DNA of 64,000 nucleotides from NCBI GenBank assembly GCA_965644265.1, contig OZ286467.1, positions 57,412,001 through 57,476,000 of the forward strand, read 5' to 3'. The stretch comes from Glycera tridactyla. Lineage: Eukaryota. Made by a program: the position numbers and the translations under genes. The notes beneath the pieces were generated by a model. The model had not been told where the DNA came from. It did not search any database and worked only from the letters and a program-made list of their open reading frames with translations. Positions 1 to 39,195 of this stretch are shown in pieces. Within the stretch, counting starts at the first letter, position 1. The number at the start of each line of letters is the position of its first letter.

Positions 1-25
1 ATTTTGCCTGCCTCTGCCACCAGGA

Positions 26-182
26 NNNNNNNNNNNNNNNNNNNNNNNNNNNNNNNNNNNNNNNNNNNNNNNNNNNNNNNNNNNNNNNNNNNNNNNNNNN
101 NNNNNNNNNNNNNNNNNNNNNNNNNNNNNNNNNNNNNNNNNNNNNNNNNNNNNNNNNNNNNNNNNNNNNNNNNNNNNNNNNN
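26..182. other. Assembly gap (157 N)
   Basis: Run of N from 26 to 182. Confidence 0.99.
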
Positions 183-355
183 TAAACAGTTTGAATGGAT
201 ATGTGGTGGGTCGTAACCCATATAAAGATCAGTGTCAGATATGATTGCCCGCTCTTGACTGAGTTTACTGACCCCTGACTACAGATGTGAACACAGTCAG
301 GTGAATCCATGTCTTGGAAGATCTCCGGGGAATGATCATCAAACTGATTTCACAT

Positions 356-356
<1 letters not shown>

Positions 357-408
<52 letters not shown>
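357..408. repeat. (GT)n microsatellite
   Basis: About 26 GT units; others are (GT)31 at 2605-2666 and (TAA)9 at 1922-1950. Confidence 0.98.
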
Positions 409-412
<4 letters not shown>

Positions 413-878
413 ATACATGCATGCATGTGAATTCAAGAGACTGTGTGAGAGATAGGTGAGATGTAGTGCTGCAACGATAACCCGATTAAATCGATTATTG
501 CATCGTTGAGAGGTCCGATGTAAATTGACAATCGGTTAAGTTATGGTCCCCAAATACAGATACAAAGTCATGATTTTGCTGCAAATTTTGAGTGTTTTGA
601 GGTCAGTCAGGGGAGTCTGAGCTCCGATTATTTAATCGATAATCAATCGCTGCTGAGTCCGATTAATTGATCATCACTTCAACAACCAAGTCTGAGCACT
701 AGTGAGATGTGGTGAGGAGCGGGAAGTGAGGGATACAGGATAATAGAATTGAACATGGATGGGTGTGATCTGGATGACAAAAATCGATGACAAACGACAT
801 GATGAACAACTATCGTGCCATGACAAAGGCCTCTTGATTTTTTTAATACATCTAACAATAGATAAGTAAGGCACTTAC

Positions 879-1918
879 GCAAATCCCACCATGCACCAGT
901 AGTTGTTGAGACCTTGGTATGGTCCTAACATAGGCAGCACGTCAGGACTGTATGTGATTGGCCCAGAGATGCACTGGGTGATTTCTGCCGTCTGTAGAAT
1001 GGGAAACAACTCCATCGCCATCTCGATATGCTTCTGAATGCGATCCAAGTCTGGCTCAAACAACTCTTTCCCAAAACCTAACAAAAAATAGGGTTGTTTG
1101 AAAAAAATGTAGTATCAATATTTCATGCCATCCAGCGTGCCTGAAGAGGGCCAGAAATCAGACTGGCCATTCACACTAATGAAGCGTCTCAATGATAGGA
1201 ACATAGATCTCGATATATTGCAATCATGTGTGTACCTCCAGGACTGGTAATTAACACAGTGCATACGCACCTTATGACGTTTCTTTTCAAGAATTCTTCA
1301 GGACATTTCCAGGATACTGAGCAATTTTCCTGGGAAAAGTCAATTACCTTGAACCATCAGATCTCTCTGTTGGTTTCTATCTTCACAGAATCAGCTCAGA
1401 AAGTATGTGATTAATTCTCAACACCACCAATTGAGCATAACTGTGTCTATTTGCCTGGTCAGAGTCAATGAATTCTGAGATCATGAAAAATGCTGATTTG
1501 CAATCAGGACAGAAATTCTGGTATGATTGCAAGCTTGAGATCATAAATCTCAGAGGTCAGGGGCCATAGTTAAAAGATACATGTACCCAAATATTTCATG
1601 GACAGTCATTAAAAACTACTCTCACATAACAATGAAAGAGAAGCCAAGAGAGGTGTTGTTCATTCCGGAGAGGTCACAATACAGACTGAGTTAAATGCTT
1701 GTACATTTTGGTGGCAAATTTTTATGTGACATTTGGATCCCTGGTGATCTTATAAATGAGGTCACATGGACATAAATCTGACCATTTTGTTGGATCCTCC
1801 AAAGCGGTATGCCGATCAAGTTTTATTGACTATGGATGAGGAGTTTTGCCGCAATCATGCTCACAAAATTTGTGACAAACAGACAGACAGACAGTATGAA
1901 ATCTGTAGAAGTCTCCTC

Positions 1919-1950
<32 letters not shown>

Positions 1951-2602
1951 GCAACTTTTTATCTAACAATATACAATAAACTTACCTGAAGTAACTCCAT
2001 TCCTGTACCAGTCATCACAGAGCCTCATCTTGTCTTCTTCCTCATACGGACCAAAGAGTAATCCTCCCCTCTCCTGCCGCAGGTAGTACGACCCCTCAAG
2101 GTCGCGGATCACTGGAAGCTCTGTCTTGAGTGCCTCAACCTCCGGAATGGGGTTTGTCACCAGGTACTGATGGTGGATGGCACACAGTGGCAGATCCAAT
2201 CCAGCAAGCTGACCGACTTCACGGCCCCAGAATCCTGCAAATCATGGCAAAATAGATCAGAGCCCATGAGACTGGCGTCGATTGGATTAAGTCAATAAAA
2301 CGAAAATAAAATCTCCGGTCATCTCATCAATATATCCCACCCGATGTCGCATTTTTCATCCACTTTCACTTCTACTCTGTGTCTCATAGTAAATTATGCA
2401 GGGATTATCTTTCTTAAGCGACGAACACACCTGTCCATTTTTTCGACTTCAGAATTTGGATCAGAATTCTGAAAGCTATCAGGTTCAAACATTTTACTGA
2501 TGGTATTCAGAATTCCAATCCGAATTCGGATGGCAAAGCACCATAAGGTGTGTTCGTGGCTTTAGAGATATTTTGACATCCAAACAGAGCTTCCCAGTGT
2601 AT

Positions 2603-2668
<66 letters not shown>

Positions 2669-5600
2669 ATGCATGTGTGAATGAGAGAGAAACACAGATG
2701 ATAAGAATCGGTAATAATGCAGCTATTGAATCCCACCAATTCTGATCGACTGTCTGAAAGGGAACTCTCTCTCACTTGGCAGTTGTTGTTTTAAACTAGA
2801 TGTATGTCCAGCATCGGATTATAGCCAAAGTCAGTTTGGCAGATATATGAAGGTAAGCAAAGGAGCAGGTGCTCAAAGTTCGAGAAATGTACATGAGAAG
2901 ACCTTCTGAAGTGGTTCTGATTGAGTAGCTTTCTCAAGTCCAAGGTGAGGAAATCGATGAGGTTGGTGCCAATTCTCAAAGCAGGATGTTGTTGATTTCA
3001 TAATGTTCAGTATTCCCACTCTTCTCCCCAGAGACCATAACATTGGTCATATCAACATGAGAAGGAATGGAACCCACCAGCATGTGTATAACTACAATTT
3101 ATTGCAGCTTTTCTATTGATACATGCTCTCTGTTCTATTACTAGAAATCCTCAAAGTGCAAACTGTATCTGATTCTTGCCATCAAGTTTACATACCCGCC
3201 GCGTTGACCAGGTGTTTGGTGCGTATTGTTCCTTTCGGCGTTACAACATCCCACAATCCATCAGACCGTTGTGTCGTTGCATCGACCGATGCACTCTGGT
3301 AGATATCAGCTCCATATTTGCGTGCACCAATAGCAAATGCTTGAGTCAATGAGTATGGGTCAATGTGCCCATCACCTGGTGTGATCAGCCCCGCAAGTAC
3401 CTGCAAAATATCGACACGAAGTAGTATACATTTTGTATTTCAGCTTATTGAACAATGATACATCTTTTGCAGAAAAGAATGCCTTCTTTACATTAGGCCT
3501 ATATCATTTATTCAAATATAGTGATGGTCTGATATTTTTGGTTCTGATTCTCAAACATAGCATCGGATATTTTTGATGGTGAAAGTCATACAAATATTAT
3601 CCTTATTATTATATCATTATATGTGAATTATATGTTATTATATCGATGGCTCAGCGCAATACTAGGCTAACTCACTATAGACAAAGAGAAGAGTTAGCCT
3701 AGTATTGCGCTGAGCCATCGATATTATCCTCTGTGAATGGGAGCATTTGCTGACGAAGGTGATCTTGTTAACTTGAGATGACTCACCTTCCCTTTATCGA
3801 TGACTGGCAACATCTCTTCAACCTCTTCTCCAGTCAGCATCCATTGCTGCGCTTTATTCCATCCCTGGCGAGACATCTGATATCGGAACTCATCCACACG
3901 TTCAGGCGTCAACGCCAAGCGAATGCTGCCAGGTTGATGATATCCTACAGCCTGTCAAGAAACAGTTTTTACGTCAGGCACATTGCATACTTTACGGTCG
4001 CCATCAAGTTCAACTAAATGCTTATAGTTCTTCAAATCTTTGTGATAGACGATCGAACAAGGGAATAGCCCAATCTTTCACAGTTGTGTTCCCTTAAATG
4101 AAGCTCCATCATCCTTCAAGCTCTTCTCTTGTTCAGAGCTCCATGCTGAGACATTTTCTACTGCAACTGAGTTCATACAGATCGGTCACTTCAAAATTCC
4201 CGACTATTTACTGACTTTTCCCCTTTCTTCAACAGAAATTCCCTGAATAAGATTTTCATTAAGCAACACAGCTGATGAAACAAGATAAAGATAGATCACA
4301 CGTTCCTGGAATTCGAAATTCATGACTTCTCACTGACTCTTGCCTTTTTGAAAACCAAATTTCCTTCTTCACAGACCACCCAAGTCATCACACATTTAAA
4401 CAATAACACTGGATCTTCCCATGAGTGACCATCAAATGAGCAACCGCCTCTCTTGAATGACTTTTTGCCGCCAAAATCATTCTCCTTATAATATGATTTA
4501 CATTTAAGGTACCCCTTTTTTGAGCGACCATATATCTTGAACGCCTACCTTCGAACAGTCAGAAAATCTCAAATGAGCGACTCTTGGAAAGTCGAGACAG
4601 ACATATTTTGTGGGTCTTCTCATGCCGGATGAGAGCATGGATGTTATCGCTAGTTATGGCTAAAGTGAATTCATCACTATTATGGTGAGAGTACTGATAT
4701 TTCTCAAAAAGATGTCTTCTGATATGCGTGTTTGGTATAATCATTTGGTGTTCGTTGACTGAGAACAAGCAAGATCACGGCCACAGGTGCAACTCTGTCC
4801 TGTATCGAGTGAATTTATCCTGACCATGGCGAAAATGTCAATATTTGTTCAGTCGTCTCATTTACAAATATAAGATATCAATATGACACTATTTGGATGT
4901 ATGAAACATGATTTGTGAGCCGAATGTGAGCTGAATGCACACACTGAAAATCACTTTGTGGTTTTAGTCCTGTCACCGGCCGACTTTGAACCTCTAAAGG
5001 GGCGACCACCTCTTTTGAACAACCAATTTTGCTTGACAATATCACAAGAGAGGTTTTACGGTAGTAACAGAGCTTCAGATTTTCTCAGAGGTCCATGGGC
5101 TTTTGACCCATGGATCGGGAATATCATGGATCAATAGACAAAACTACAGGCCATCTACCATTTATGGATAACCTCCTCTAAAGACCACCTCTCTATGAAG
5201 AAAACTCTGAGCTGCGACTGTGGTAGTATTTTGAACAGTAAATGACTTTTCTTAAAAGACCATATACCTATAAAGGGCATTTTTTTATGCGACCTAAGGT
5301 GGTCCTTATAGAGAGGTTCAACTGTATTTGTTCAAATCCTGTTCCCTCAGCAACAGTCATGAAATAAACAAAGGAACTTCTTACTTCATATGTGCCAATT
5401 GCTCCAAAATCTTTCTGATCACTGGGCAATAAAAATTGTAGGTAAAACGTGACCTGCCTGATCGTCACACCTGGTTGCCAATGTCAGTCAGCAGGTATCA
5501 GTTTCAAGCTTCCCATTCCAACATATCCAATATAATATACAGTTGAATAAACCTTCAAAGAAAGACTATGTATTTTGTGAAATATCTCTGTATTTTAGGA

Positions 5601-27500: not shown

Positions 27501-30500
27501 TATAAGTTGACCCCACTATTTCACTTTGAAATGTCAGGATTGAGGCGAATTCTGACATGTTGGTTGACTGCATGGTGTTTGCTGTTCAATCCATGATGTT
27601 CTCCAGCTCACACATGCTGGATCTGGATAATTCTGTATTCGGTGATATATAGAAAAGACCATCTTCAATAGAAATTTTGGATTCATTGATGAGCATTGGC
27701 TGACTTTCACTTAGGCATTTCTACACTGTGCATACTTGAGACTGCCATTATTATGTCAGTATTGTTGAACCTGTCTATGAAGACCACCCTTGGTCACATA
27801 AAAAAGTGGCCTTTGTAGATAGGTTTTTCATAGAAAATGTAATCGCTGTCATAGCTCAGGGTGGCGTTTGTAGGCAGATGACCTCTGTATAGAGGTGGTC
27901 TTGAGCTGGTTCACCATTTATATACGTTAAGTAATTTCCAGCATTACAGGTTGCCAGTTGCCCATTCACCTAATTAATATTTTCAGTAATTTTATGCCAC
28001 ACCATTGTTTGGAATGCTTGATGGAAAGTGTTGCTTGTATTTTGAAAGATCTGTAGATTGAAATGGAGCTTCTTTCCCCTTTCATAGCTTTGGAACCACG
28101 CATCTGCACACGCTGGGATATCCATCGATTTGCCCGGGAAGCGTACGAGATGGGCATTCGTTACATAGGTGGCTGCTGTGGATTTGAAGCCTACCATATC
28201 CGGGCTGTAGCAGAAGAACTAGCGAAGGAACGAGGGCGTTTGCCAGCTTCGTCTGAGAAACATGGACAGTGGGGTGTAGGCCTTGCTATGCATACCAAAC
28301 CATGGGTTCGCGCCAGGTCTGTGAACAAATCTTGTAATATTTTCCTGAAATCAATATTCCATTATCTGACAGATTTGCAAAAATAGAACGTTTTGAATAT
28401 CTATTTTGTGGGCAAAACATCCCTGAAGAGCAAATTCATATGAAGTGAGTATCACAGAAGCCAAGATGACATAATGGTCATCATGTTGAAAATGATAGAG
28501 GAAAGCTCCACCAAAATTATCACCGAAAAGAAATCATCATGGCCAAGATTTTGTTTCAGTATCGAAAACAAGGCAGAAGTCCACAATTCATACAATGCAC
28601 CAATTGAGATTCCTTTAAATGTAAGGATTCAAAAGAAAAACTCATGCAGCTACTGACATCTAGCTCAGGTAATTGGGCAGATGTTCTGATTTTGATTATT
28701 TGTGTGCAGGGCACATCGAGCATACTGGGAGAAGTTGAGGCCAGCGTCCGGTCGTCCGTACTGTCCTGCGATGAACCGACCTGCGTGCTGGGGAGTGACT
28801 GCTGTAAGTATAATATACAAATGTACTGGTAGCCAAGATGCTGCAGATCATGTCATATCAAAATTTCTCAGCTGTAGTGAACAAGGTTGATGCATATCAC
28901 AGATATCAGATTTCTAAAGGTTGCCAGTGTATCTGCATGGATCCTCATTGATTACTATTTACTGGGCCCAGAAGTTCTCTGGTGTGGGCCTCTCTTTTCT
29001 GATCAGTTCATACTCATATTTAGATGCAATGTGTACCCTTGTAGCTATCGGTTGTCTTCAAGGAACAGGAGTCAAGATTCCTTCAATCTTGGTTGGGCCG
29101 CCAGCTCTCCATCCTTCAGGTGTCTTGAGATTCGAAGTGCCAAAAACCCCAACCTGGTATTTCACTGATGACCTGCCCATATATAGTCCAGTCAATAAAC
29201 AGTTGAGGTTCAACAAAATTGTCAGAAAAGGTTTCTCAATGGAATTCATTTCTTTGGCACCTCCTAATTACCAGAAAAAAAGTTTACCAAAATTTGCCCT
29301 GGGCAACTGCCCCAAATATGGCCAAATCCAAGATGGCCGCCATAAAAAGGTCAGAAATCTGAAATATGCAATAATTTTGGTGACAGTCAAGATAAAAACC
29401 TGTTTAATGGGTCCATTCATATCTGCTTTCAATGAGTGATGTGATGGAATAATCATTTTGTTGAAAGAGTTTGCAAAAATTGGCCAAATCCAAGATGGCC
29501 ACCATCAAAATGTCAAAAAATCAAGAAAATGCCATAAATATTGCACCAATCAAAATAGAAACATGTTTAATTGCTCTATTGATATTGCCTTTCAATGAGA
29601 AATGCAATGAGATGACCATTCCTGAAAGAAGTCTCGCAAAAATGGGCCAAAAATTCAAGATGGCCACCATCAAAATGTCGAAAAACGAAGGAAATGACCT
29701 AAAAATGACACAAATCATGATAGAATCATGTCTAATGGCTCTATTCATATTGCCTTCTAATGAGCAATGCAATAAGATGATGATTTCTGAAAAAAGTATC
29801 ACAAAAATAGGCCAAATTCAAGATGACCAGCATCAAAATGTCAAGAAAACAAAAGCAATACCGCAAATATGGCACCAATTAAGATGGGAACATATCTGCT
29901 TTCAATGAGCTTTCAATGAACATGCTGTGGGATAATAATTTTTGAAACAATAGCACTGAAACCAGAATTCTTTCGAAAAATTATGAATTTTTATATAGTG
30001 ATAATTTAACTATGAGATTGTATTGAACAGATTCAAACCCTAATCTTCCTTTCCCAGTACTTGATGAACAAAATATGGAACTATTGTTTGATCTGCAACT
30101 ATTTTCATAATAAGACAGTTGCAAAAAGCCACCATTAAGATGAGCATTGGTTGCCACATAAGGAGACCAGAAACAAAGCATTGCCGTCATGTGAAATCAC
30201 TTATGAGAATATTCCAGCAATTACCAAGTCATAAATGTGCAGTGTGAATTTACAGAGTGGCCACATTGATGAATATCACTGCAAGACTGAATGAAATCAA
30301 ATTGTAATTCTACTTTGCATGTTTTATATCAGTATAGTCTGTCAAACAGGTGGGCTTGGCAGGCAGGCAGACCAGTGCAGTTTAGTGAGATCATCTTGAC
30401 TACCACAGGTAACATTACCTTTGCATCAATGCATGATACCATTTATGATGGCCACATGCCATGCTACATTGCAGTCCATTTTTTCTGCATCAAGTATGAA

Positions 30501-33500
30501 TTATCTCAAAGTCACAGGACAGATACATCTGATGGTTGTCAAGATGCTGGTGCAGGAACTTGGCCCATTCTATGTGGCTTCAAGGCATATGCTTGTAGCT
30601 GTATCTGAAGATACTGACACGATTCTTTCTGCTGTAAGTTGTTGTCTAACCAGGATTGTACCTAAAGGTAGACTCGCTCACTGTAGAATGTGACGGGATC
30701 CTATTTAGATTCCAACCATGGAAAGGACCATAATGCATTGCAATGGCTTGATTTCCAGCCTTCTCTGATTTCTCATGGCTTACATCTGCACCAATAAACA
30801 ATTTTCAGATGTCCTGCAGCACAGCATATTTCTCTAGAGCTGAAATTGTTTTCAATGTCATTTGGTCTTGATGTTGTGTCACACTGAGACAATAAGTGAA
30901 TGAAAAGTGAGTTTCTGAGGTCAGAGCTGTGGTTTCTCTGTTAGATTGATATGTCAATGAGGTTTGTGCTTGACTGAAAAATGAGTCTCATTGCCAATCA
31001 GATTGAAGTGGTACTGGAGTAGCATGAGCAGGTATGTGTCATGCCCCACAACAATCACCAGCCACTCACAGCAATATAGCAGGCAGCATTGTAATGTCAT
31101 AGTCAGCATCATCAGATGAATGTTGAACTTGAATGCCTTTTTCTTTCTCCGGTACAGACACAAGGAGAAATATGAACAGCTGTTTGTTTTTGAGATTTTC
31201 CAGAAAAGACTTTTGCATAACACCACCATATTTGTGCCAACATTGACCTCCATTCCCATGTCACTACCAGCTATCCTCTTATGAGTCCCATCTTTAGTTC
31301 AGTCAAGTGAGATGATGAAGCATTGGCCTTCCATCAATGACACAGCTCATTAAAGGAGGCTTGATACTTCCAAAGCTGGAGACCAGAAGGTGCTCATATG
31401 GTTTCTCAGAAATGAACACACATGGGGAGCAAATGCATTACTGGTCCTATTCACCCTCCTTATTCAACCCCACACTATCCATGTGACTGTTGGACAAGGC
31501 CGATCACAAGAATGAGCTGATGAGAGAGGTATCAATGTGTTTGCCTGAGGAACATCCCATCTGTGTAATATAAGTCATTGATCATGAGACTATCATCCTT
31601 CAGACAAGCACAGATCTTATAGATATAGCTATCTGTCAGGGCCAGGAAGACCTTGGCCTTGACCTCAGTCACTCACTGCTCTTTATTCATGTATTGTCTT
31701 GGTATGACACCACAACGAGACCGTATGGCATTTGAAAAATTGCAGCTCTTGGAAAATATGCATGAAACTTCAAAACTATACATGGCTGCTAATTTAAACC
31801 ATGAGAAATTGGAGAAGGCTGGATATCAAGCACTTGCAATATTGTATTTTTCTATCTATGGGTCGAGTCTAAATTTTGAGCATGCATTGAAATTCACAGA
31901 AAAAAAAAAGTATTCAGCTCATCCTATCAACATCCTGAATGTCTCCCACCAGCGTCAGAATCCGCCAAGTTTTAAAACCAAAGGATCTACCTAGGTGCTC
32001 CTGATCAGGCAATAACTCAAAGCTGACCCAAATGGGCAGCAGCATCTTGAAAACCCTCAGATGTATCTGCACTGGTGAATGATGATGCATGTTCAGTGCA
32101 GAAAAATGGACTGCAATGTAGCATGGCATGTGGCCATTCTGGAGGGGTATCATGCATGAATTAAAACGGTAATGATTCCTCAGATAGTTTAGGTGATCTT
32201 ACTACACTGGTCCCACTGTCTACCTGCCTGACAAGCCCACCTCATTGACAGGCTTTACTGATATCGGATATCAGTAGGAGAATTACAATTTGATTTCATT
32301 CAGTCTTGCGGTGATATTCATCAATGTGACTACTCCATAAATTCTCACTCACATTTATGACTTGATAATTGTTAGAATATTCACATAGCATATCTTAGTT
32401 TGATTTCCATTATATCTTCACTTTAATGATATGATGGGGAGGGATTTCCTTGTTTTTTGTGGCTATTCAGCAACTGTCCCATCGTGAAATTTGTTGTAGA
32501 TGAAATTATAGCTCCATATTTCTCTCATCATACTGAAAGTAAGGGAAAAGAAAGATTGTAGAATGAATCTTCTCAATACAATCTCATAGTACAACTACCA
32601 TACATTACTGATAATTTGTAATTTTCCAAAAGATTTTCAATTTCTATGAAATTGTTCTTAGAAAAGATTCCCTCATTGTGTTGCTCATTGAAATCAGATA
32701 TGGACAGATCCAACGAACATGTTTCCATCACGATTAGTACCATATTTATGATATTTTCTTTGTATTTTGACATTTTGATGGCAGCCATCTTGAATTTGGC
32801 CAATTTTTTTCAGACTTTTTTTAAAGGGAAGATCATCCTGTCGCGATATTTAATGAAGCGTCTGCCTTCAGAGGTAATATTTCAAGTAGTCTGTATGGGA
32901 GGTTAATAAACAACTCGAATCCGCCATGCGCGTTATGTCATCTCTCAACATGGTGGCAGCGGTCAAAACTGCTTAATAATGTCAGAAGATGCTGCCAGTT
33001 TGCTGTCAACTGTTGGTGCTTGAGAGAGAAGAGTGCCAAGATGTCTCAGAAGAAAGAAGAGTGCTTGTTGTTTCAACTGAAGGTTGCTGTGAGTGAACTG
33101 TCAAACCAGTGAAGTGGCTTCACTTGTCAAGCACATGTCAGCCATGTGTTCATGTCAGCAGCAGTCTCCTGTGCCCAATGCCAGTTTTCTGAGAGTCATC
33201 CAGTGGTCTTCTGTCTGATGTTTGTGTAATGTCAACATGATGAACTGCTCCATTGATGAATGCACTGAATATCACAAGCTATCCCAGTCAGCTGAAAATG
33301 CCTTCAGCCAACAGTCATCAGTCTGTCCTGTCTCTGGCGTCAGTCATCCACATGCTGAAGTATGTTGTATGTGTGCCCATTCAGCATGAACTACCAGTGC
33401 CGGTCGAGTTCTGCGTCTGTCATTAACAACTGACATTTGTCGCTTGCGTGTCATGTGAGAACAACAAGCAATGTACATATCGCTCGTGTGCATTGTCAGC

Positions 33501-36500
33501 CAGCTACATCTGTTGATATGGTGCCCAGTTGAGTTACATCTGTTTTGTCAGACATGAGTCACATCTGTCAGTCATGTGCTACAACAGTCGTGCCATAATT
33601 GCCAGTCGTGTGCCATCGATAAACCATCAGCTGTCTACGTCAGTCGTGTGTCACATTTTTCTGCCATAAACTGCACAAATGCATCTGTCAGTGCCGTGTC
33701 ACGTCGGTGAATAGTGTGTTTACATTCACAGTCACGAATGCCTTGGTCAGTGTCATATTACGTCGGTGTATCGTGTGTCTATATTCACAGCCATCTACCT
33801 AAAATTAGACTTACATTTGTCGCTCACATTAATTGTATAGTTGGTGCTGATAGATGGTAAATATGTTCAAGTTTGCACCACCAGAGCCCTTGGATTTTGA
33901 TAATCCCTCCAGTTGGCCAGAATGGAAGAGTCGATTTTTACGGTATAGGCTGGCAACCAAATTGAACAAGGAGGATGGTATAATTCAAGTCAGTTCGCTC
34001 ATCTATGCAATGGGTCGCCAAGCTGAGCATATCTACAAGTCATTTAAATATACCAGTCATTCAGGGTCGACAACTCCTCCAGGAAGTCAGTCCCCATCTA
34101 GTCAAGCTGCAGCAGGGGACCCGTCTGAAGATTTTGAAACTGTCTTACAGAAATTTGAGGATTGGTTTGTGCCGAAAAGAAATACCATTCATGAACGCGC
34201 GAAGTTCAACTTGAGAGTTCAACGACCTGGAGAGTCAATTGAGAGTTTCGTCCGAAACTTACATGAGTTGAGTGCATATTGTAATTTCAAAGAACAAGAG
34301 AGTGAAAATATAAGAGACCGACTCATCTGTGGCATGCTCGACAAGGAGCTGTCCTTGAAGTTACAATTAGAGCAAGACAGCCTCACTCTCGAGAAAGCGA
34401 TTGACATGGCGCGTCATTCAGAGATGGTGAAAAGCCAAAATGAAGGTGACAGTGTGAGTGCCGTGACCACCAAATATAAGTCGTTTAAGTCAAAGTCGAA
34501 AGGTCATCAGTCGCGTACACCGTCAAGTCAGAAATCACAGTCAGCGTCCAAAGACAAATGCGGACGTTGTGGATACATCCATAGGTCGAAAAGAGAGGAT
34601 GCATGCCCAGCCATAGGTAAAGAATGCTCAAAATGTCATAAACTAGGTCATTTTCAGTCGGTGTGTCGCTCAACAAAATCTGGTGGAAATGTGCGCGAAG
34701 TGAATGAAGAAGAGTCCAGTGACAGTGACGAAAACCCAGCTTTGTTCCTTGGTGCCGTCGACTGCTCTGATTCAGAGCCCCCATGGAGATGTGACATTGA
34801 TATTGGTGAGAAGACAGTCCCATTCAAACTTGATACTGGGGCAGACACATCCATCATTTCCTATGACACATATTTGTCTTTGAGGCCCAGACCCAAGCTC
34901 AAGCCGCTCTTGAGTCATCTCAACTCACCCGGTGGCCCTCTTGAATGTGTTGGACAGTTCATTGCTCAAGGTCGAGTGAACTCAAATGAACAAAAGTGCT
35001 CATTCAGGGTGTGTGTTGTTACAGGTAAACAGGAAAATTTGCTGAGTCGAGGTGTTGCAAGCAAAATGGGTCTTGTCGAATTGAAAGTTTCAGAAATGAC
35101 TGAAGTATTTGGTGACATTGGTTGTATGAAAACTGATCCAGTTAAGATTGTGCTCAAAGAGGGTGCCAGTCCTTATGCCTTGGGCGTAGCTCGTAGAGTT
35201 CCGATACCCCTTTTGCCAAAAGTTGAACAAGAAATTGAGAGACTTTTAGAAGCAGGTGTTATTGAAGAAATCACCAAGCCCACATCATGGTGTGCCCCCA
35301 TGGTGCCCATTGTAAAAAAGTCAGGTAAAGTTCGACTTTGTGTTGACCTGGGTAAACTGAATGATTCCGTTGAACGAGAGAGATTCATTTTGCCTACTAT
35401 TGATGATGTCACATCCAAACTGTCTAATGCCAAGGTATTCTCATGCCTGGATGCTGCCAGTGGGTTCTATCAGATTCCTTTGGTAGAAGAGAGTCGTGAA
35501 CTCACAACATTTATAACACCTTTTGGTCGTTATTGTTTCCGACGCCTGCCATTTGGCATCACATCTGCTCCCGAAATTTTCATGCGGAAAATGTCACAAT
35601 TGTTGGAAGGTTTGAGTGGTGTGTTTTGCTATATGGATGATATTTTGGTGTTTGGGAAAGACAAAGACGAGCATGATGAAAGATTGAAAAATGTGTTGAA
35701 TATTATCGAAGCATCTGGCCTGAAACTCAACAAAGATAAGTGTGTATTTGAACAGTCTGAACTATGTTATTTGGGACACAAGTTTGGACCAGAGGGTGTC
35801 AGTCCAGATCCAGAGAAGGTGTCAGCAATTCAGAATATGTCAGCTCCCTCGAACCTGACAGAACTGCGTCAGTTTCTAGGGATGGTTCATTTCCTAGGGT
35901 CATATTTGCCAAACCTTCACACTATCACTCGCCCTCTGAATGATTTGTTGAAGTCTGATGTTGTGTGGAATTGGGGTCCTCTTCAAGAGAAGGCATTTTC
36001 CCAAGTCAAAGAGTTAGTCTCATCTTCTTCAGTCCTTGCATATTATGATGCCACAAAGCCGACTTTGGTGTCAGCCGATGCCAGTAGTTATGGCCTCGGT
36101 GGCGTATTGCTACAGAAACATGGGGAGAAGTGGCGTCCAGTAGCGTGTTGCTCCCGCACACTCAGCTCAGCTGAACAAAAGTACGCCCAAATTGAGAAAG
36201 AGTGCTTAGCTGGTGTGTGGACTTGTGAAAAGTTTACCAGATTCTTATATGGACTGCCTGATGTGAAGCTTCTGACCGACCACAAACCCTTGGTGCCATT
36301 GATAAACAGTAAGGATCTCAACAGTGTTCCTTTGAGGTGCCAGCGCCTATTGATGAGGTTGATGCGCTTCAAGGTAACTGCTGAATATGCACCTGGAAAA
36401 ACTCTTGTGGTGGCAGATGCCTTGTCACGCAGTCCGATGATTTCTCGTGAGAAAGAAGATTCAGTGGAAGAAGTTGAATTATTTGTTGGTATGATTGAAC

Positions 36501-39195
36501 AGTCACGCCCTGCTTCTGAAAATAAGTTGAACGTGTTTCGTGTTGCTACTAAAGATGATCCTGTTTTGCAGCCAGCAATTATATATACTTTAACTGGTTG
36601 GCCCAAATTTGAACGTGATGTTCCCCAAGACTTGAGAGAGTTGTTTAATGTTAGAGGTCATTTGTCAGTCAGTGAGGGCTTGTTAACATATGCTGATCGC
36701 ATTATTGTTCCAAAAGTGATGCGTCCCGGTGTCCTTGACAGTATCCATGAGGGTCATCAGGGAACCACAAGATGTCTAGAAAGAGCCAGGATGTCAGTAT
36801 GGTGGCCTGGTATCACACAAGATATCAAGCAGATTACAAAATCATGTGATTTCTGTTTGTCTCACCAGCCCACACAGAAGAGCCCTTGATTACTTCACCA
36901 TTGCCCCAGGGTCCATGGTTGCGTGTTGGTGCAGATCTTGCTACATTGAAGGGCCACAATTATCTCATCATGAAAGATTACTATTCTCGCTACATTGAGA
37001 TTATACATCTAACTAGCACAACATCGTCATCTGTCATTGCTAAAATGAAAGATATTTTTGCAAGATGGGGAATTCCTCAAGAGCTAGTTTCTGATAATGG
37101 TCCGCAGTTTGCTTCATCTGAATTTCAGAAATTTGCTCAAGCCTATGGGTTCATCCATATCACATTCAGCCCACATTTGCCTCAGGCCAATGGTATGACG
37201 GAGCGTGCAGTACATACTGCAAAGAAAATCCTTCGGCAGAAGGACCCGTGGTTAGCCCTCATGATTTATAGGGATACACCCCATTCAGTGACAGGGTTCA
37301 GCCCAGCTGTCCTTATGATGGGAAGACATTTACGTACTAATCTCCCATGTCTCCCAGCCCATCTGCGTCCAAAATGGCCTGATGAGGAGCTTGTGCGAGC
37401 CAATGATGATGCCGCCAAAGAGAAATATGCCCATTACTATAACAAGCGGCATGGTGTTCAGCCACTCAGTGAGCTGCGCCCCGGCTCAAATGTTCTAGTG
37501 AAACTTGATGGTGAAAAACACTGGACCAGAAGAGGAAGTGTGAAAAATGTTGCAGGTACTCCTCGCTCTTATCTGGTCCAAACTGAGACAGGTTTACATC
37601 GCCGCAACCGGCGTCATTTGAGACCTGTTGAAGATTGTGGTTCTCAGCCAGGTATTCCACCTGATGGAAAATCACCACAATCAGCTCCATCGAGGTGTGT
37701 TATTCAGCGTCATGATGTCTCCACACCTAATGCTCCTATGCCCAACATCCCACATCACAATGATGTGCCATCTGCCTGTCCAAAAACCATGACACCAGTC
37801 AAGGTGAACATCGCCCCGACCCCATCCTTGGTGTCATGCACCCGTTCAGGTCGTACAGTAAAACCACGTTCAAGATTGCTTGAAGAAATTTGATTAGCGT
37901 GGTGAACACAAATTGATTAGTCACACGGTTGCTCAGTTTGTTCTACAGTTGCATCTTGCATTGGTCACACTGTATCAGGTAATACCCTGTTTCTGATCAA
38001 GTCTGTTGTTCTATATTTACTTTGTCATAGCAGTACTCAATCTTTGATGCTATATTGTCTATATATTGTCTTAAAGGGGGAGGTGTCGCGATATTTAATG
38101 AAGCGTCTGCCTTCAGAGGTAATATTCCAAGTGGTCTGTACTGGAGGTTAATAAACAACTCGAATCCGCCATGCGCGTTATGTCATCTCTCAACACATCC
38201 CATTGCATTTCTCATTGAAAACAGATATGGATAGAGCCATTGAACATGTTTCTATCTCGTTTGGTGCCATATTTATTGCATTTTCTTTGTTTTTTGACAT
38301 TTCGATGCCAGCCATCTTGAATTTGGCCTATTTTTGTGAAACTTCTTTCAGAAGTGATCATCTCAATGAATTGCTTGTTGGAAGCAGATATGAAAAGAGT
38401 CATTAAACATGATTCTATCGTGATTTGTGCCATTTCTATGGTATTTTCTTTATTTTTCGACATTTTGATGGTGGCCATCTTGAATTTTTGGCTCATTTTT
38501 GTGAAACTTCTTCTTGAGAATGATCATCCCATTGCATTGCTCGTTGAAAGGCAATATGAATAGAGCCATTCAACATGTTCCTATCTGGACTGGTGCAATA
38601 TCTATGGCATTTTCTTGGTTTTTTGACATTTGGATGGCGGCCATCTTGGATTTGGCCAATTTTTGCTGGCTATTTCAACAAAATGATTATTCCATCACAT
38701 CACTCATTGAAAGCAGATATGAATAGACCCATTTAACAGGTTTTTATCTTGATTGCCACCAAAATTATTGCATATTTCAGATTTCTGACCTTTTTATGGC
38801 GGCCATCTTGGATTTGGCCATTTTTGGGGCAGTTGCCCAGGGCAAATTTTGGTAAACTTTTTTTCTGTTAATAAGGAGGTGCCATAGAAATGAATTCCAT
38901 TGAGAAACCTTTTCTGACAATTTTGTTGAACCTCAGTGTTTTTTTCACCTTCGTTGACTGGACTATATATGGTTGTGCATGTAGATGGCAGCCACCAATG
39001 GGCGTAGGACATTTATTTTGTAGCATTGCCATCGGAGATGATGTGGCCTAGGTGATCCATGGTCATGAGTGATGTCTATATAAGCCATATGTGCATGTAT
39101 ATCTTGTTTACTTCCAGGGTCACGAAATCCTGAAACAGCAGAAGGAAATGACAGCTGCCGAGGAGTTGAAAGACCTCGCTGGCAAGATAGCATAG
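15540..39195 (+). CDS. BHMT: Betaine-homocysteine S-methyltransferase, complete, 397 aa
   Basis: Exons: 15540-15542 (ATG only, cgaaATG|gtgagt), 21691-21838, 22658-22776, 25696-25887, 27075-27405, 28088-28316, 28710-28803, 39118-39195 (1194 nt, phases consistent). Motifs: [52 protein letters not shown], Zn ligands GVNCHFDP and YIGGCCGF, and a C-terminal helix [26 protein letters not shown]. The ENRGN segment and C-terminal helix mark BHMT rather than mammalian BHMT2. The ATG-only exon 1 is the least certain part. Confidence 0.96.
16529..19193 (-). mobile_element. Solo LTR, 2,665 bp, in BHMT intron 1
   Basis: TG...CA ends (TGTAGCG / CGCCACA imperfect inverted termini); 4-bp TSD TAAC at 16525-16528 and 19194-19197. 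Removing it rejoins the flanks into a copy of the repeat unit seen near 16200-16250. On the - strand: TATAAAA at 18778-18772 and AATAAA near 16970. No internal retroviral ORF. Confidence 0.75.
19917..20090 (+). mobile_element. MITE family A copy
   Basis: CAGTCAAACCTGTCTATAAAGACCGCC...GCAGGTTTGACT. Confidence 0.8.
20228..21508. mobile_element. 1.28-kb non-autonomous Tc1/mariner-like element with nested MITE A (21118-21294, TA TSD) and a GATGTT microsatellite
   Basis: Perfect 24-bp TIR CAGTAAAACCTGTCTTGGGAGACC; a short relative lies at ~43345-43500. Confidence 0.72.
23611..23784 (+). mobile_element. MITE family A copy
   Basis: Same internal sequence as 5613-5790; ends CTACTG|TA. Confidence 0.75.
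23847..24068. mobile_element. TA-flanked MITE (GAGACC family); relative at 51598-51756
   Basis: CAGCGAAACCTGCGATGAGAGACC...GGTCTCTCATTGCAGGTTTCACAG. Confidence 0.7.
26209..26386 (-). mobile_element. MITE family A copy, reverse orientation
   Basis: TA|CAGTGGAACCTG...CAGGTTCGACTG|TA; another reversed copy at ~5165-5324. Confidence 0.82.
30420..31350 (-). pseudogene. Degraded Academ-type transposase C-terminal region (XPG/FEN1-like nuclease plus Cys-rich tail), left copy
   Basis: Broken frames on the - strand: [11 protein letters not shown]; [31 protein letters not shown]; [17 protein letters not shown]; [15 protein letters not shown]; ILTTIRCIC; [14 protein letters not shown]. Many stops and frameshifts. 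Confidence 0.72.
31660..32165 (+). pseudogene. Degraded Academ-type transposase C-terminal region, right copy
   Basis: Broken frames on the + strand: [20 protein letters not shown]; [15 protein letters not shown]; [14 protein letters not shown]; [11 protein letters not shown]; (CRK)[19 protein letters not shown]-stop. Confidence 0.72.
32839..38195 (+). mobile_element. Ty3/Gypsy LTR retrotransposon (Mag-like), full length, 5,357 bp
   Basis: LTRs 32839-32950 and 38084-38195 (112 bp, TG...CA, 4 mismatches); 5-bp TSD CATCC (32834-32838, 38196-38200); PBS TGGTGGCAGCGGT 32951-32963 (complementary to the 3' end of tRNA-Leu AAG/UAG); PPT AAAGGGGGAGG 38073-38083; domain order gag-PR-RT-RH-INT. Confidence 0.97.
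33854..37893 (+). CDS. Gypsy gag-pol polyprotein with a single 1-bp frameshift near 36880
   Basis: 33854-36889: gag with Cys/His knuckles (CGRCGYIH..C; [14 protein letters not shown]), protease [26 protein letters not shown], RNase [10 protein letters not shown], integrase zinc finger H-x-GH..C-x2-C. 36886-37893: integrase core (GADL..SDNG..NGMTER) and RRNRRHL. The junction CAGAAGAGCCC lacks one G of the expected QKEPL. Confidence 0.93.

What the first reader, a model, noticed from the sequence alone, without database searches (positions are those of the whole stretch)
29184..38965. Palindromic transposon built from two Academ 3' ends that moved as one unit
Seen in sequence: the element is not a simple long-TIR MITE. 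Its inverted arms (29184-~30930; ~31655-32838 plus 38201-38965) each carry the decayed C-terminal half of a transposase (XPG-like CDTTS motif, [19 protein letters not shown]), reading outward on opposite strands. The arms look close to identical at the outer ends and much more diverged inside, as if two different copies were fused head to head. One TATA TSD brackets the whole. Knowledge: Academ elements have TAG...CTA termini, 3-4-bp TSDs and an XPG-like domain. Inference: a chimera of two right ends was mobilised in trans, so Academ transposase would not need a distinct left end. In BHMT pre-mRNA it could also form kilobase dsRNA.
Basis: partly seen in the sequence, partly recalled or inferred. 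Interest (0 to 1): 0.7.

Follow-up and report, generated by a model that had tools for sequence, protein, structure and literature searches.

The report
Fold-back non-autonomous AcademX transposon family
This is one copy of a roughly 57-copy, 4.4-kb non-coding jumping gene whose two inverted arms each hold a dead remnant of the same nuclease-coding tail. It is a real but fairly ordinary derivative of the known AcademX transposons, and its two tips are not both "right ends".

Summary
Window 29184-38965 is one DNA transposon with TAG...CTA termini and a TATA duplication. A Ty3/gypsy-type LTR element (32839-38195) splits it, and without that insert it is 4425 bp.

Each arm carries a decayed copy of the same C-terminal protein region, reading outward. 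That region is a FEN/XPG-like nuclease plus a Cys-rich tail: profile match to EXO1, and a fold match at Z 10.9.

At least 20 full-length copies (89-98% identical to the window copy) share the same centre but have different, mostly 3-bp, duplications. About 57 genome sites carry the junction sequence. So the element moved as a unit, and AcademX-type is the best classification.

The "two right ends" inference is not supported. The tips differ after base 12. The same two tip types flank ~6.5-kb coding-type relatives, with the left type at the 3' end and the right type at the 5' end. About 46 other elements also pair one tip of each type.

The arm identity gradient (about 100% outside, 60-80% inside) is already present in the family's majority sequence. 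The origin is inferred, not shown; I favour an old inverted duplication of the 3' region. Empty site, expression and dsRNA could not be tested.

Unchecked first-reader notes from this scan describe similar Academ palindromes elsewhere in this genome.

The parts
29180..29183 (.). Left target-site duplication, TATA
   Evidence: It matches 38966-38969. A 3-bp reading would mismatch (ATA against TAT).
29184..29208 (+). Left tip, 'L-type' (TAGTCCAGTCAATAAACAGTTGAGG). This type sits at the 3' end of the 6.5-kb coding-type relatives.
   Evidence: 325 genome matches at up to 2 mismatches; nuclease ORFs read toward this tip type at C11:49363960 and C11:38485097.
29314..29893 (.). Left subterminal array, 3.5 units of a 165-bp repeat
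   Evidence: TRF, 77% matches. It pairs with the right array at 88.7%.
29894..30441 (-). Left spacer, 3'-UTR-like, homologous to 32186-32639 of the right arm
   Evidence: 29314-30553 against 38662-32036, 73.9% over 1291 nt.
30442..31348 (-). Left-arm remnant of the FEN/XPG-like nuclease plus Cys-rich tail. It matches P0001 aa 21-337 and P0018 aa 270-586, and possibly also the VIDGRPML motif at 31320-31348. It has frameshifts, stops and a deletion of about 24 aa.
31349..31429 (.). Head-to-head junction zone between the two arms; the exact point is not resolved
   Evidence: bound it. No nucleotide symmetry beyond chance was found. The 29-mer beside it, at 31320-31348 in the left arm's inner end, is shared by 57 genome sites.
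31430..32185 (+). Right-arm remnant of the same protein region. 31430-31597 resembles P0018 aa 173-228 (marginal, E 0.001) and is fused in frame to aa 373-592. That gives an internal deletion of about 150 aa, with the break at P0001 aa 124. It also has two frameshifts and several stops.
32640..32838 (.). Inner part of the right subterminal 165-bp repeat array, cut off by the LTR insertion
32839..38195 (+). Nested Ty3/gypsy-type LTR retroelement. It has 112-bp LTRs (32839-32950 and 38084-38195, 4 differences), TG..CA ends and a CATCC target duplication (32834-38 and 38196-200). Its ORFs lie at 33854-36889 and 36886-37893.
   Evidence: Pfam finds RVT_1, RT_RNaseH, Integrase_H2C2 and rve.
38196..38826 (.). 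Outer part of the right subterminal array, 3.9 units of a 163-bp repeat
38941..38965 (-). Right tip, 'R-type' (TAGTCCAGTCAACGAAGGTGAAAAA on the minus strand). This type sits at the 5' end of the 6.5-kb coding-type relatives.
   Evidence: 313 genome matches. It lies about 4.5 kb upstream of the nuclease ORF at C11:49370458, C11:38491569, C1:28650896 and C1:126033417.
38966..38969 (.). Right target-site duplication, TATA
28711..28803 (+). BHMT exon (..[27 protein letters not shown]) with an AG acceptor and a GTAAGT donor. The element begins 380 bp downstream of it.
   Evidence: No further downstream exon was found.

Best explanation
**Shown**
- Window 29184-38965 is one copy of a non-autonomous DNA transposon family. 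The element is 4.4 kb without the nested LTR element.
- About 57 sites carry its junction sequence, and the window copy differs from the family majority sequence by 1.2%.
- It has a 12-bp perfect terminal inverted repeat, arrays of a 165-bp subterminal repeat on both sides, and 3-bp (here 4-bp) target duplications.
- Its interior consists of two diverged, inverted remnants of the 3' part of an AcademX-type gene: a FEN/XPG-like nuclease plus a Cys-rich tail and the 3' UTR.
- It encodes nothing functional, so it must be moved in trans.
- Its two tips are of two different types. These are the same two types that bound ~6.5-kb coding-type relatives, with the L type at the 3' end and the R type at the 5' end.

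**Inferred**
- The transposase of those relatives recognises the shared tips and the subterminal repeat arrays.
- The fold-back interior arose once, long before the recent burst, by inverted duplication of the 3' region of a single element.
- The most likely route is gap repair. A strand copied inward from the 5' terminal repeat switched onto the homologous, inverted 3' terminal repeat and copied the 3' UTR and C-terminal coding region. It was then joined head to head with the strand copied from the true 3' end.
- After that the inner arms drifted to about 60-80% identity, while the outer 500-700 bp stayed at 82-100% because transposition depends on them.
For: - **Unit mobility.** At least 20 full-length copies, 89-98% identical to the window copy, match the query from base 1 to 3655. 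18 of 20 have perfect, mutually different 3-bp duplications. The junction-zone 29-mer has 57 hits, 24 of them exact.
- **Arms.**. The gradient is present in the majority sequence, so it predates the amplification.
- **Protein.**
  - phmmer found homologues such as P0001, and the word search found 192 more.
  - An hmmsearch profile hits human EXO1 at E 4e-4 over 200 aa.
  - The AF2 model has pLDDT 89.5.
  - Foldseek's top hits are FEN1, XPG, Rad2 and EXO1. VIA-align gives Z 10.9 for EXO1, 9.3 for FEN1 and 8.7 for XPG.
  - PF02739 is found in 2 of 61 homologues.
- **Arm-to-protein map.**
- **Tips.** L has 325 hits and R has 313.
  - C11:49363960(L)..49370458(R) and C11:38485097(L)..38491569(R) are 6.5 kb. 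Their nuclease ORF lies on the strand that reads toward L.
  - C1:28650896 and C1:126033417 are R tips lying 5' of the ORF.
  - The left-arm piece is 70-73% identical in protein to exactly these elements.
  - About 46 L-R pairs were seen on contigs visible in both lists, with no L-L pair.
- **Age of the event.** The aa-124 break of the deleted arm recurs in many subfamilies.
- **TSD length.** AcademX makes 3 or 4 bp (PMC10045372).
Against: - Their 5' subterminal region, their DDE domain and their relation to the right arm are therefore inferred from coordinates only.
- **No shared lesions.** The two arms share no inactivating lesion, so a single dead source is not shown.
- **Tip type not rigidly tied to arm type.** Some subfamilies carry the deleted arm next to the L tip. 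One element on C28 has R tips at both ends.
- **Centre not resolved.** No nucleotide symmetry is left at the centre.
- **Transposase source uncertain.** Of the four coding-type relatives I could place against their tips, three have stop codons inside the nuclease match, and the longest open frames seen for this type are 609-707 aa. A live transposase source for the youngest copies is not shown.
Confidence: 0.6

Rival explanations
1. Two separate, already diverged Academ copies lay head to head, their 3' halves were fused by deletion, and the chimera was then mobilised using two right ends.
For: - Both arms carry 3' coding remnants that read outward.
- The inner arms are only about 60-80% identical even in the family majority sequence.
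- The arms share no frameshift or deletion.
- The right-arm ORF is closer in protein identity to arms of other subfamilies (48-64%) than to its own left arm (41-47%).
Against: - The right tip is the type found at the 5' end of the coding-type elements, not the 3' type. A plain 3'+3' fusion should be L-L, and no L-L pair was seen among about 46 pairs.
- The higher identity to other subfamilies is also what one expects if those subfamilies inherited the same old fold-back as orthologous arms. The shared aa-124 break fits that reading.
Confidence: 0.2
2. The autonomous relatives themselves have about 1.9-kb terminal inverted repeats that include the C-terminal coding region. The window family would then be a simple internal-deletion derivative.
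For: Unchecked first-reader notes in this genome mention Academ loci whose inverted arms include the transposase C-terminus (s1-340517). The outer 700 bp do behave as long inverted repeats.
Against: - Geometry argues against it. In the 6.5-kb elements the nuclease ends about 0.9 kb from the L tip and begins about 4.5 kb from the R tip.
- That is just enough for the ~1,200 further residues expected upstream of the nuclease in a ~1,500-aa protein (ORFs of 1419-1514 aa in other families of this genome) plus a ~0.8-1-kb 5' end. It leaves no room for a second 1.2-kb coding remnant.
- No opposite-strand nuclease hit was listed inside these elements. That search scores only the best candidates, so this point is weak.
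Confidence: 0.05
3. A locus-specific rearrangement or assembly artefact with a chance TATA repeat.
For: The target site is a TA-rich stretch where a 4-bp repeat could arise by chance.
Against: The same 4.4-kb structure occurs at 20 or more other loci with their own duplications. In an independent public run, a contig ends its match exactly at base 29184 and continues into different flanking sequence (X1 record 1).
Confidence: 0.01

Closest known systems
AcademX DNA transposons (Academ superfamily; Kapitonov & Jurka 2010; Kojima 2020, as cited in PMC10045372)
   Same: - 3-4-bp target duplications.
- A FEN/XPG-like nuclease domain in the coding relatives.
- Terminal inverted repeats.
- Giant single ORFs of 1419-1649 aa that carry this nuclease elsewhere in the same genome.
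   Different: - This family is non-autonomous.
- Its interior is two inverted remnants of the 3' region rather than a deleted collinear gene.
- I found no description of such fold-back Academ derivatives in the searchable literature. Kojima's 2020 paper was not held.
Foldback elements of Drosophila and palindromic non-autonomous families (for example the C. elegans PAL families and Tc7). Cited from my own knowledge, not checked here.
   Same: - Long inverted arms make up most of the element.
- The outer arms are built of tandem subrepeats.
- Movement is in trans.
   Different: - The duplications here are 3-4 bp, not the 9 bp of FB.
- The arms contain recognisable remnants of the partner's coding tail.
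- The tips belong to the Academ-type group of this genome.
Rearranged derivatives made during repair of the excision gap, such as maize double-Ds or internally rearranged P elements. Cited from my own knowledge.
   Same: An inverted duplication of one end region inside a cut-and-paste element, followed by mobilisation in trans.
   Different: The mechanism is only inferred here. The product became a long-lived, diversified lineage rather than a one-off allele.

Membership tests
AcademX (Academ superfamily) | Target-site duplication of 3 or 4 bp | tested here: met
   18 of 20 other copies have perfect 3-bp duplications. The window copy has 4-bp TATA. The criterion comes from PMC10045372.
AcademX (Academ superfamily) | Encodes an XPG/FEN-like nuclease | tested here: met
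   - Both arms align to P0001 and P0018.
- The profile of 61 homologues hits EXO1.
- The model (pLDDT 89.5) matches EXO1, FEN1, XPG and Rad2 at Z 8-10.9.
- The acidic residues D13, D85, D87, D109 and D164 are invariant, and D111 is conserved in at least 90% of the homologues.
- In the window copy itself the domain is dead, with stops and frameshifts.
AcademX (Academ superfamily) | Academ-type DDE transposase in the autonomous partner, fused upstream of the nuclease | not testable with these tools
   - There is no Pfam model for it (PMC5751038).
- DNA of the 6.5-kb and 1,500-aa-ORF loci could not be fetched.
   The TAG...CTA ends and a 12-bp perfect TIR are present in all copies. I could not verify from any held paper that this terminus is diagnostic of Academ.
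Foldback (FB) superfamily | Long inverted arms of tandem subrepeats together with 9-bp target duplications | tested here: not met
   Arms with 165-bp subrepeats are present, but the duplications are 3-4 bp. The element resembles FB in form only.
Transposon with two identical ('right') ends | Both tips of the same type | tested here: not met
   The tips differ at bases 13-35, including a 10-bp indel, in every copy. The L and R types map to the 3' and 5' ends of the coding-type elements.

The most novel reading that the evidence does not exclude
Head-to-head duplication of the 3' region is a regular by-product of the AcademX transposition and repair pathway, perhaps linked to its flap-nuclease step. 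Such fold-back derivatives would then be the preferred non-autonomous form in this genome, and their interiors could be flipped by recombination between the long terminal repeats. Several subfamilies show the same arms attached to the opposite tip types, which fits flipping. If true, these elements would carry a readable footprint of an untested transposition mechanism.
Probability: 0.12. Interest if true: 0.6.

Novelty: new variant of a known kind. Interest (0 to 1): 0.33.

Why it matters
AcademX elements have never been studied at the bench. A multi-copy derivative that keeps only the tips, the subterminal repeat arrays and two dead copies of the 3' region narrows down which sequences are enough for mobilisation. 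It also offers a natural series (L-R, flipped, one R-R) for asking whether the two ends are equivalent. For the host genome it is an ordinary insertion downstream of a BHMT exon (probably intronic), later hit by an LTR element.

Tried and rejected
- **Pfam on window and L060 ORF pieces:** nothing relevant. P0001 and its first homologues also gave no significant family.
- **phmmer of P0001 against PDB sequences:** nothing.
- **First AF2 model, from 10 sequences:** pLDDT 39.7, discarded.
- **Papers:** Kojima's 2020 AcademH paper is not held.
- **Test for leftover nucleotide symmetry at the centre:** not above shuffles.
- **Search for a BHMT exon downstream of the element:** no convincing hit. 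PF02574 did not flag the window in the exon-wise genome search, although the exons are visible by motif.
- **Sequencing runs:** no run holds more than 13% of the junction words. Laid contigs show only other copies and no empty site or transcript. Polymorphism, expression, editing and small RNAs therefore remain untested.
- **Rfam on the left flank:** nothing.
- **Rejected readings:** assembly artefact, and long coding TIRs in the autonomous element.

Full report
**Observation**

The inverted structure is real.
- The repeat finder and a blastn of the element against its own reverse complement give three paired stretches: 29194-29893 with 38944-38246 (88.7% over 701 nt), 29314-30553 with 38662-32036 (73.9% over 1291 nt, insert removed), and 30703-30991 with 31874-31584 (about 70%).
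- The outer arms are arrays of a 165-bp repeat: 3.5 units at 29314-29893, and about 5 units at 32640-32838 plus 38196-38826.
- The termini are TAGTCCAGTCAA... and ...TTGACTGGACTA, flanked by TATA on both sides.
- The gap in the right arm is a nested Ty3/gypsy-type LTR retroelement at 32839-38195. It has 112-bp LTRs with 4 differences, TG..CA ends, a CATCC duplication, and RT, RNase H and integrase domains. I only describe that element.
- Without it the transposon is 4425 bp.

**It moved as a unit**

A DNA search of the window's own 2.04-Gb assembly found at least 20 copies matching bases 1-3655 of the query contiguously at 89-98% identity. Each is followed by the inverted outer arm.
- I extracted both ends of 20 copies. 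All have the same termini, and 18 have perfect, mutually different 3-bp duplications (TAT, AAT, GTG, ATA, TAA, CTA, CAA, AAA, TGT, ATC, TTG and others).
- The window copy only fits a 4-bp TATA.
- A 29-mer from the junction zone occurs 57 times in the genome, 24 times exactly, and never in the reversed control.
- Copies differ from the family majority sequence by 1.2-6.2%. The window copy, at 1.18%, is among the youngest. Older copies at 83-88% identity also exist.

**What the arms encode**

The ORF pieces hit nothing in Pfam.
- A full HMMER scan of 1.84 billion representatives with L060:1390-1827 found 13 relatives. The word search with the best of them, P0001, found 192.
- Sources call some of these "5'-3' exonuclease" or "Tesmin/TSO1-like CXC domain-containing". 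They come from molluscs, cnidarians, crustaceans and insects.
- A profile of 61 homologues matches human EXO1 over about 200 residues at E 4e-4.
- PF02739 is found in 2 members.
- The AlphaFold model has pLDDT 89.5. Its best structural matches are all FEN/XPG-family 5' nucleases: by Foldseek, FEN1, XPG, Rad2 and EXO1; by VIA-align, EXO1 Z 10.9, FEN1 9.3 and XPG 8.7.
- The acidic residues expected for this fold are conserved: D13, D85, D87, D109 and D164 are invariant and D111 nearly so.

tblastn maps the arms onto these proteins.
- The left arm, minus strand 31298->30442, covers P0001 aa 21-337.
- The right arm, plus strand 31580->32185, covers aa 124-351.
- With the longer homologue P0018, the right arm appears to continue upstream. 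31430-31597 resembles aa 173-228 (E 0.001, marginal) and is fused in frame to aa 373. If so, the right arm carries an internal deletion of about 150 aa rather than a truncation.
- Frameshifts and deletions lie at different places in the two arms.
- The head-to-head junction is somewhere in 31350-31430. No nucleotide symmetry survives there.

**The tips**

This is the result that changes the interpretation. The two ends are identical for only 12 bases. They then differ up to about base 35, including a 10-bp indel, and this holds in every copy.
- The left-type 25-mer occurs 325 times and the right-type 313 times in the genome.
- On the contigs visible in both lists they pair as one L and one R at distances of 0.9-6.5 kb. 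I counted about 46 such pairs by hand, with no L-L pair.
- One R-R element of family-typical length lies on C28, where the L list was not visible.
- Two pairs are 6.5 kb long: C11:49363960(L)..49370458(R) and C11:38485097(L)..38491569(R). Each contains a largely preserved nuclease ORF, 63-64% identical to P0001, on the strand that reads toward the L tip and ending about 0.9 kb from it. The R tip lies about 4.5 kb upstream.
- Two further loci, C1:28645365-28646420 (609-aa open frame) and C1:126027203, have an R tip at the same upstream distance.
- These elements are also the closest coding relatives of the window family's left arm, at 70-73% protein identity.

So the L tip is the 3' end and the R tip the 5' end of the coding-type element, and the window element has one of each. 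It is not bounded by two right ends. It therefore gives no evidence that the transposase can do without a distinct left end.

**The identity gradient**

Identity is about 100% at bases 91-190, 82-86% at 490-725 and 60-82% inside. The same profile is seen in the majority sequence of 18 copies, so it predates the recent burst.
- It fits constraint on the tips and repeat arrays together with neutral drift inside. It does not require two different source copies.
- The break at P0001 aa 124 recurs in hits from many other subfamilies, which suggests that the fold-back is old and has diversified.
- In some subfamilies (3.95 kb, 2.78 kb) the same arm types sit next to the opposite tip type. This could mean that the interior is flipped by recombination between the long terminal repeats. 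It rests on coordinates only.

**Most likely origin (inferred)**

An inverted duplication of the 3' region of one element during repair of an excision gap. A strand primed from the 5' terminal repeat switched to the homologous inverted 3' repeat. This explains a 5'-type tip on an arm that otherwise looks 3'-derived.
- Long coding TIRs in the autonomous element are unlikely on geometry.

**Classification**

AcademX is the best fit. The evidence is the 3-4-bp duplications (PMC10045372), the XPG/FEN-like nuclease, and the giant ORFs of 1419-1649 aa that carry this nuclease in the same genome. The Academ DDE domain itself could not be tested.

**Host context**

BHMT exons lie on the plus strand at about 21745, 27243, 28168 and 28711-28803, and the last ends in a GTAAGT donor. 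The element starts 380 bp further on, so it is probably intronic. I found no downstream exon. No public run holds the locus. The empty site, expression, dsRNA and editing are all untested.

**Limits**

Every statement about the 6.5-kb elements and the other subfamilies therefore rests on search coordinates, identities and strands, not on read sequence.
- A majority-rule sequence of this non-coding DNA transposon family was computed inside scripts, only to compare the arms. Short junction-zone stretches of it were printed to choose the 29-mer search pattern.
- Nothing of the kind was done for the LTR retroelement.

Noticed in passing
window 32839-38195: A Ty3/gypsy-type LTR retroelement sits inside the right arm's repeat array. 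It has unusually short 112-bp LTRs (4 differences), a CATCC duplication and a PBS-like TGGTGGCAGCGG. Its gag-pol frame is nearly open: a 1011-aa ORF, then an overlapping 335-aa integrase ORF in another frame.
   Followed up: partly
window 29065-29175: The about 110 bp just left of the insertion site is covered at enormous depth by contigs from runs of other organisms (X2, X3). It looks like a widespread short interspersed repeat. There is no Rfam match.
   Followed up: partly
G000:C4:84629813-84633771, C18:12090781-12094735, C11:45036691-45040627, C10:112533746-112536524: These related fold-back subfamilies carry the deleted or the long nuclease arm next to the opposite tip type from the window family. 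This may reflect flip isomers made by recombination between the long terminal repeats. The evidence is coordinates only.
   Followed up: partly
G000:C28:60459553-60463815: An element of family-typical length (4263 bp) has the R-type tip at both ends. It is the only such case seen.
   Followed up: no
G000:C4:35948950-35997041: Five exact L-type tips lie on the same strand about 12 kb apart. This suggests a tandem segmental array that contains one of these elements.
   Followed up: no
G000:C31:22375521-22376561 and C31:22389534-22390574: Two 1419-aa open frames carrying the nuclease domain lie in inverted orientation 14 kb apart. Other open frames of 1504-1514 and 1649 aa elsewhere are candidate intact AcademX genes.
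   Followed up: no
L009:5175-5991: A separate, more diverged Academ-like nuclease fragment lies about 15 bp beyond the L tip of that copy (tip at 5161). It may be an adjacent or nested insertion.
   Followed up: no
G000, many loci (for example C1:47319473-47319706, C40:1540750-1540986): A sister subfamily keeps a 116-aa open frame over the right-arm-type remnant in dozens of copies, at 58-64% identity to the window's ORF. This is probably shared descent rather than selection.
   Followed up: no
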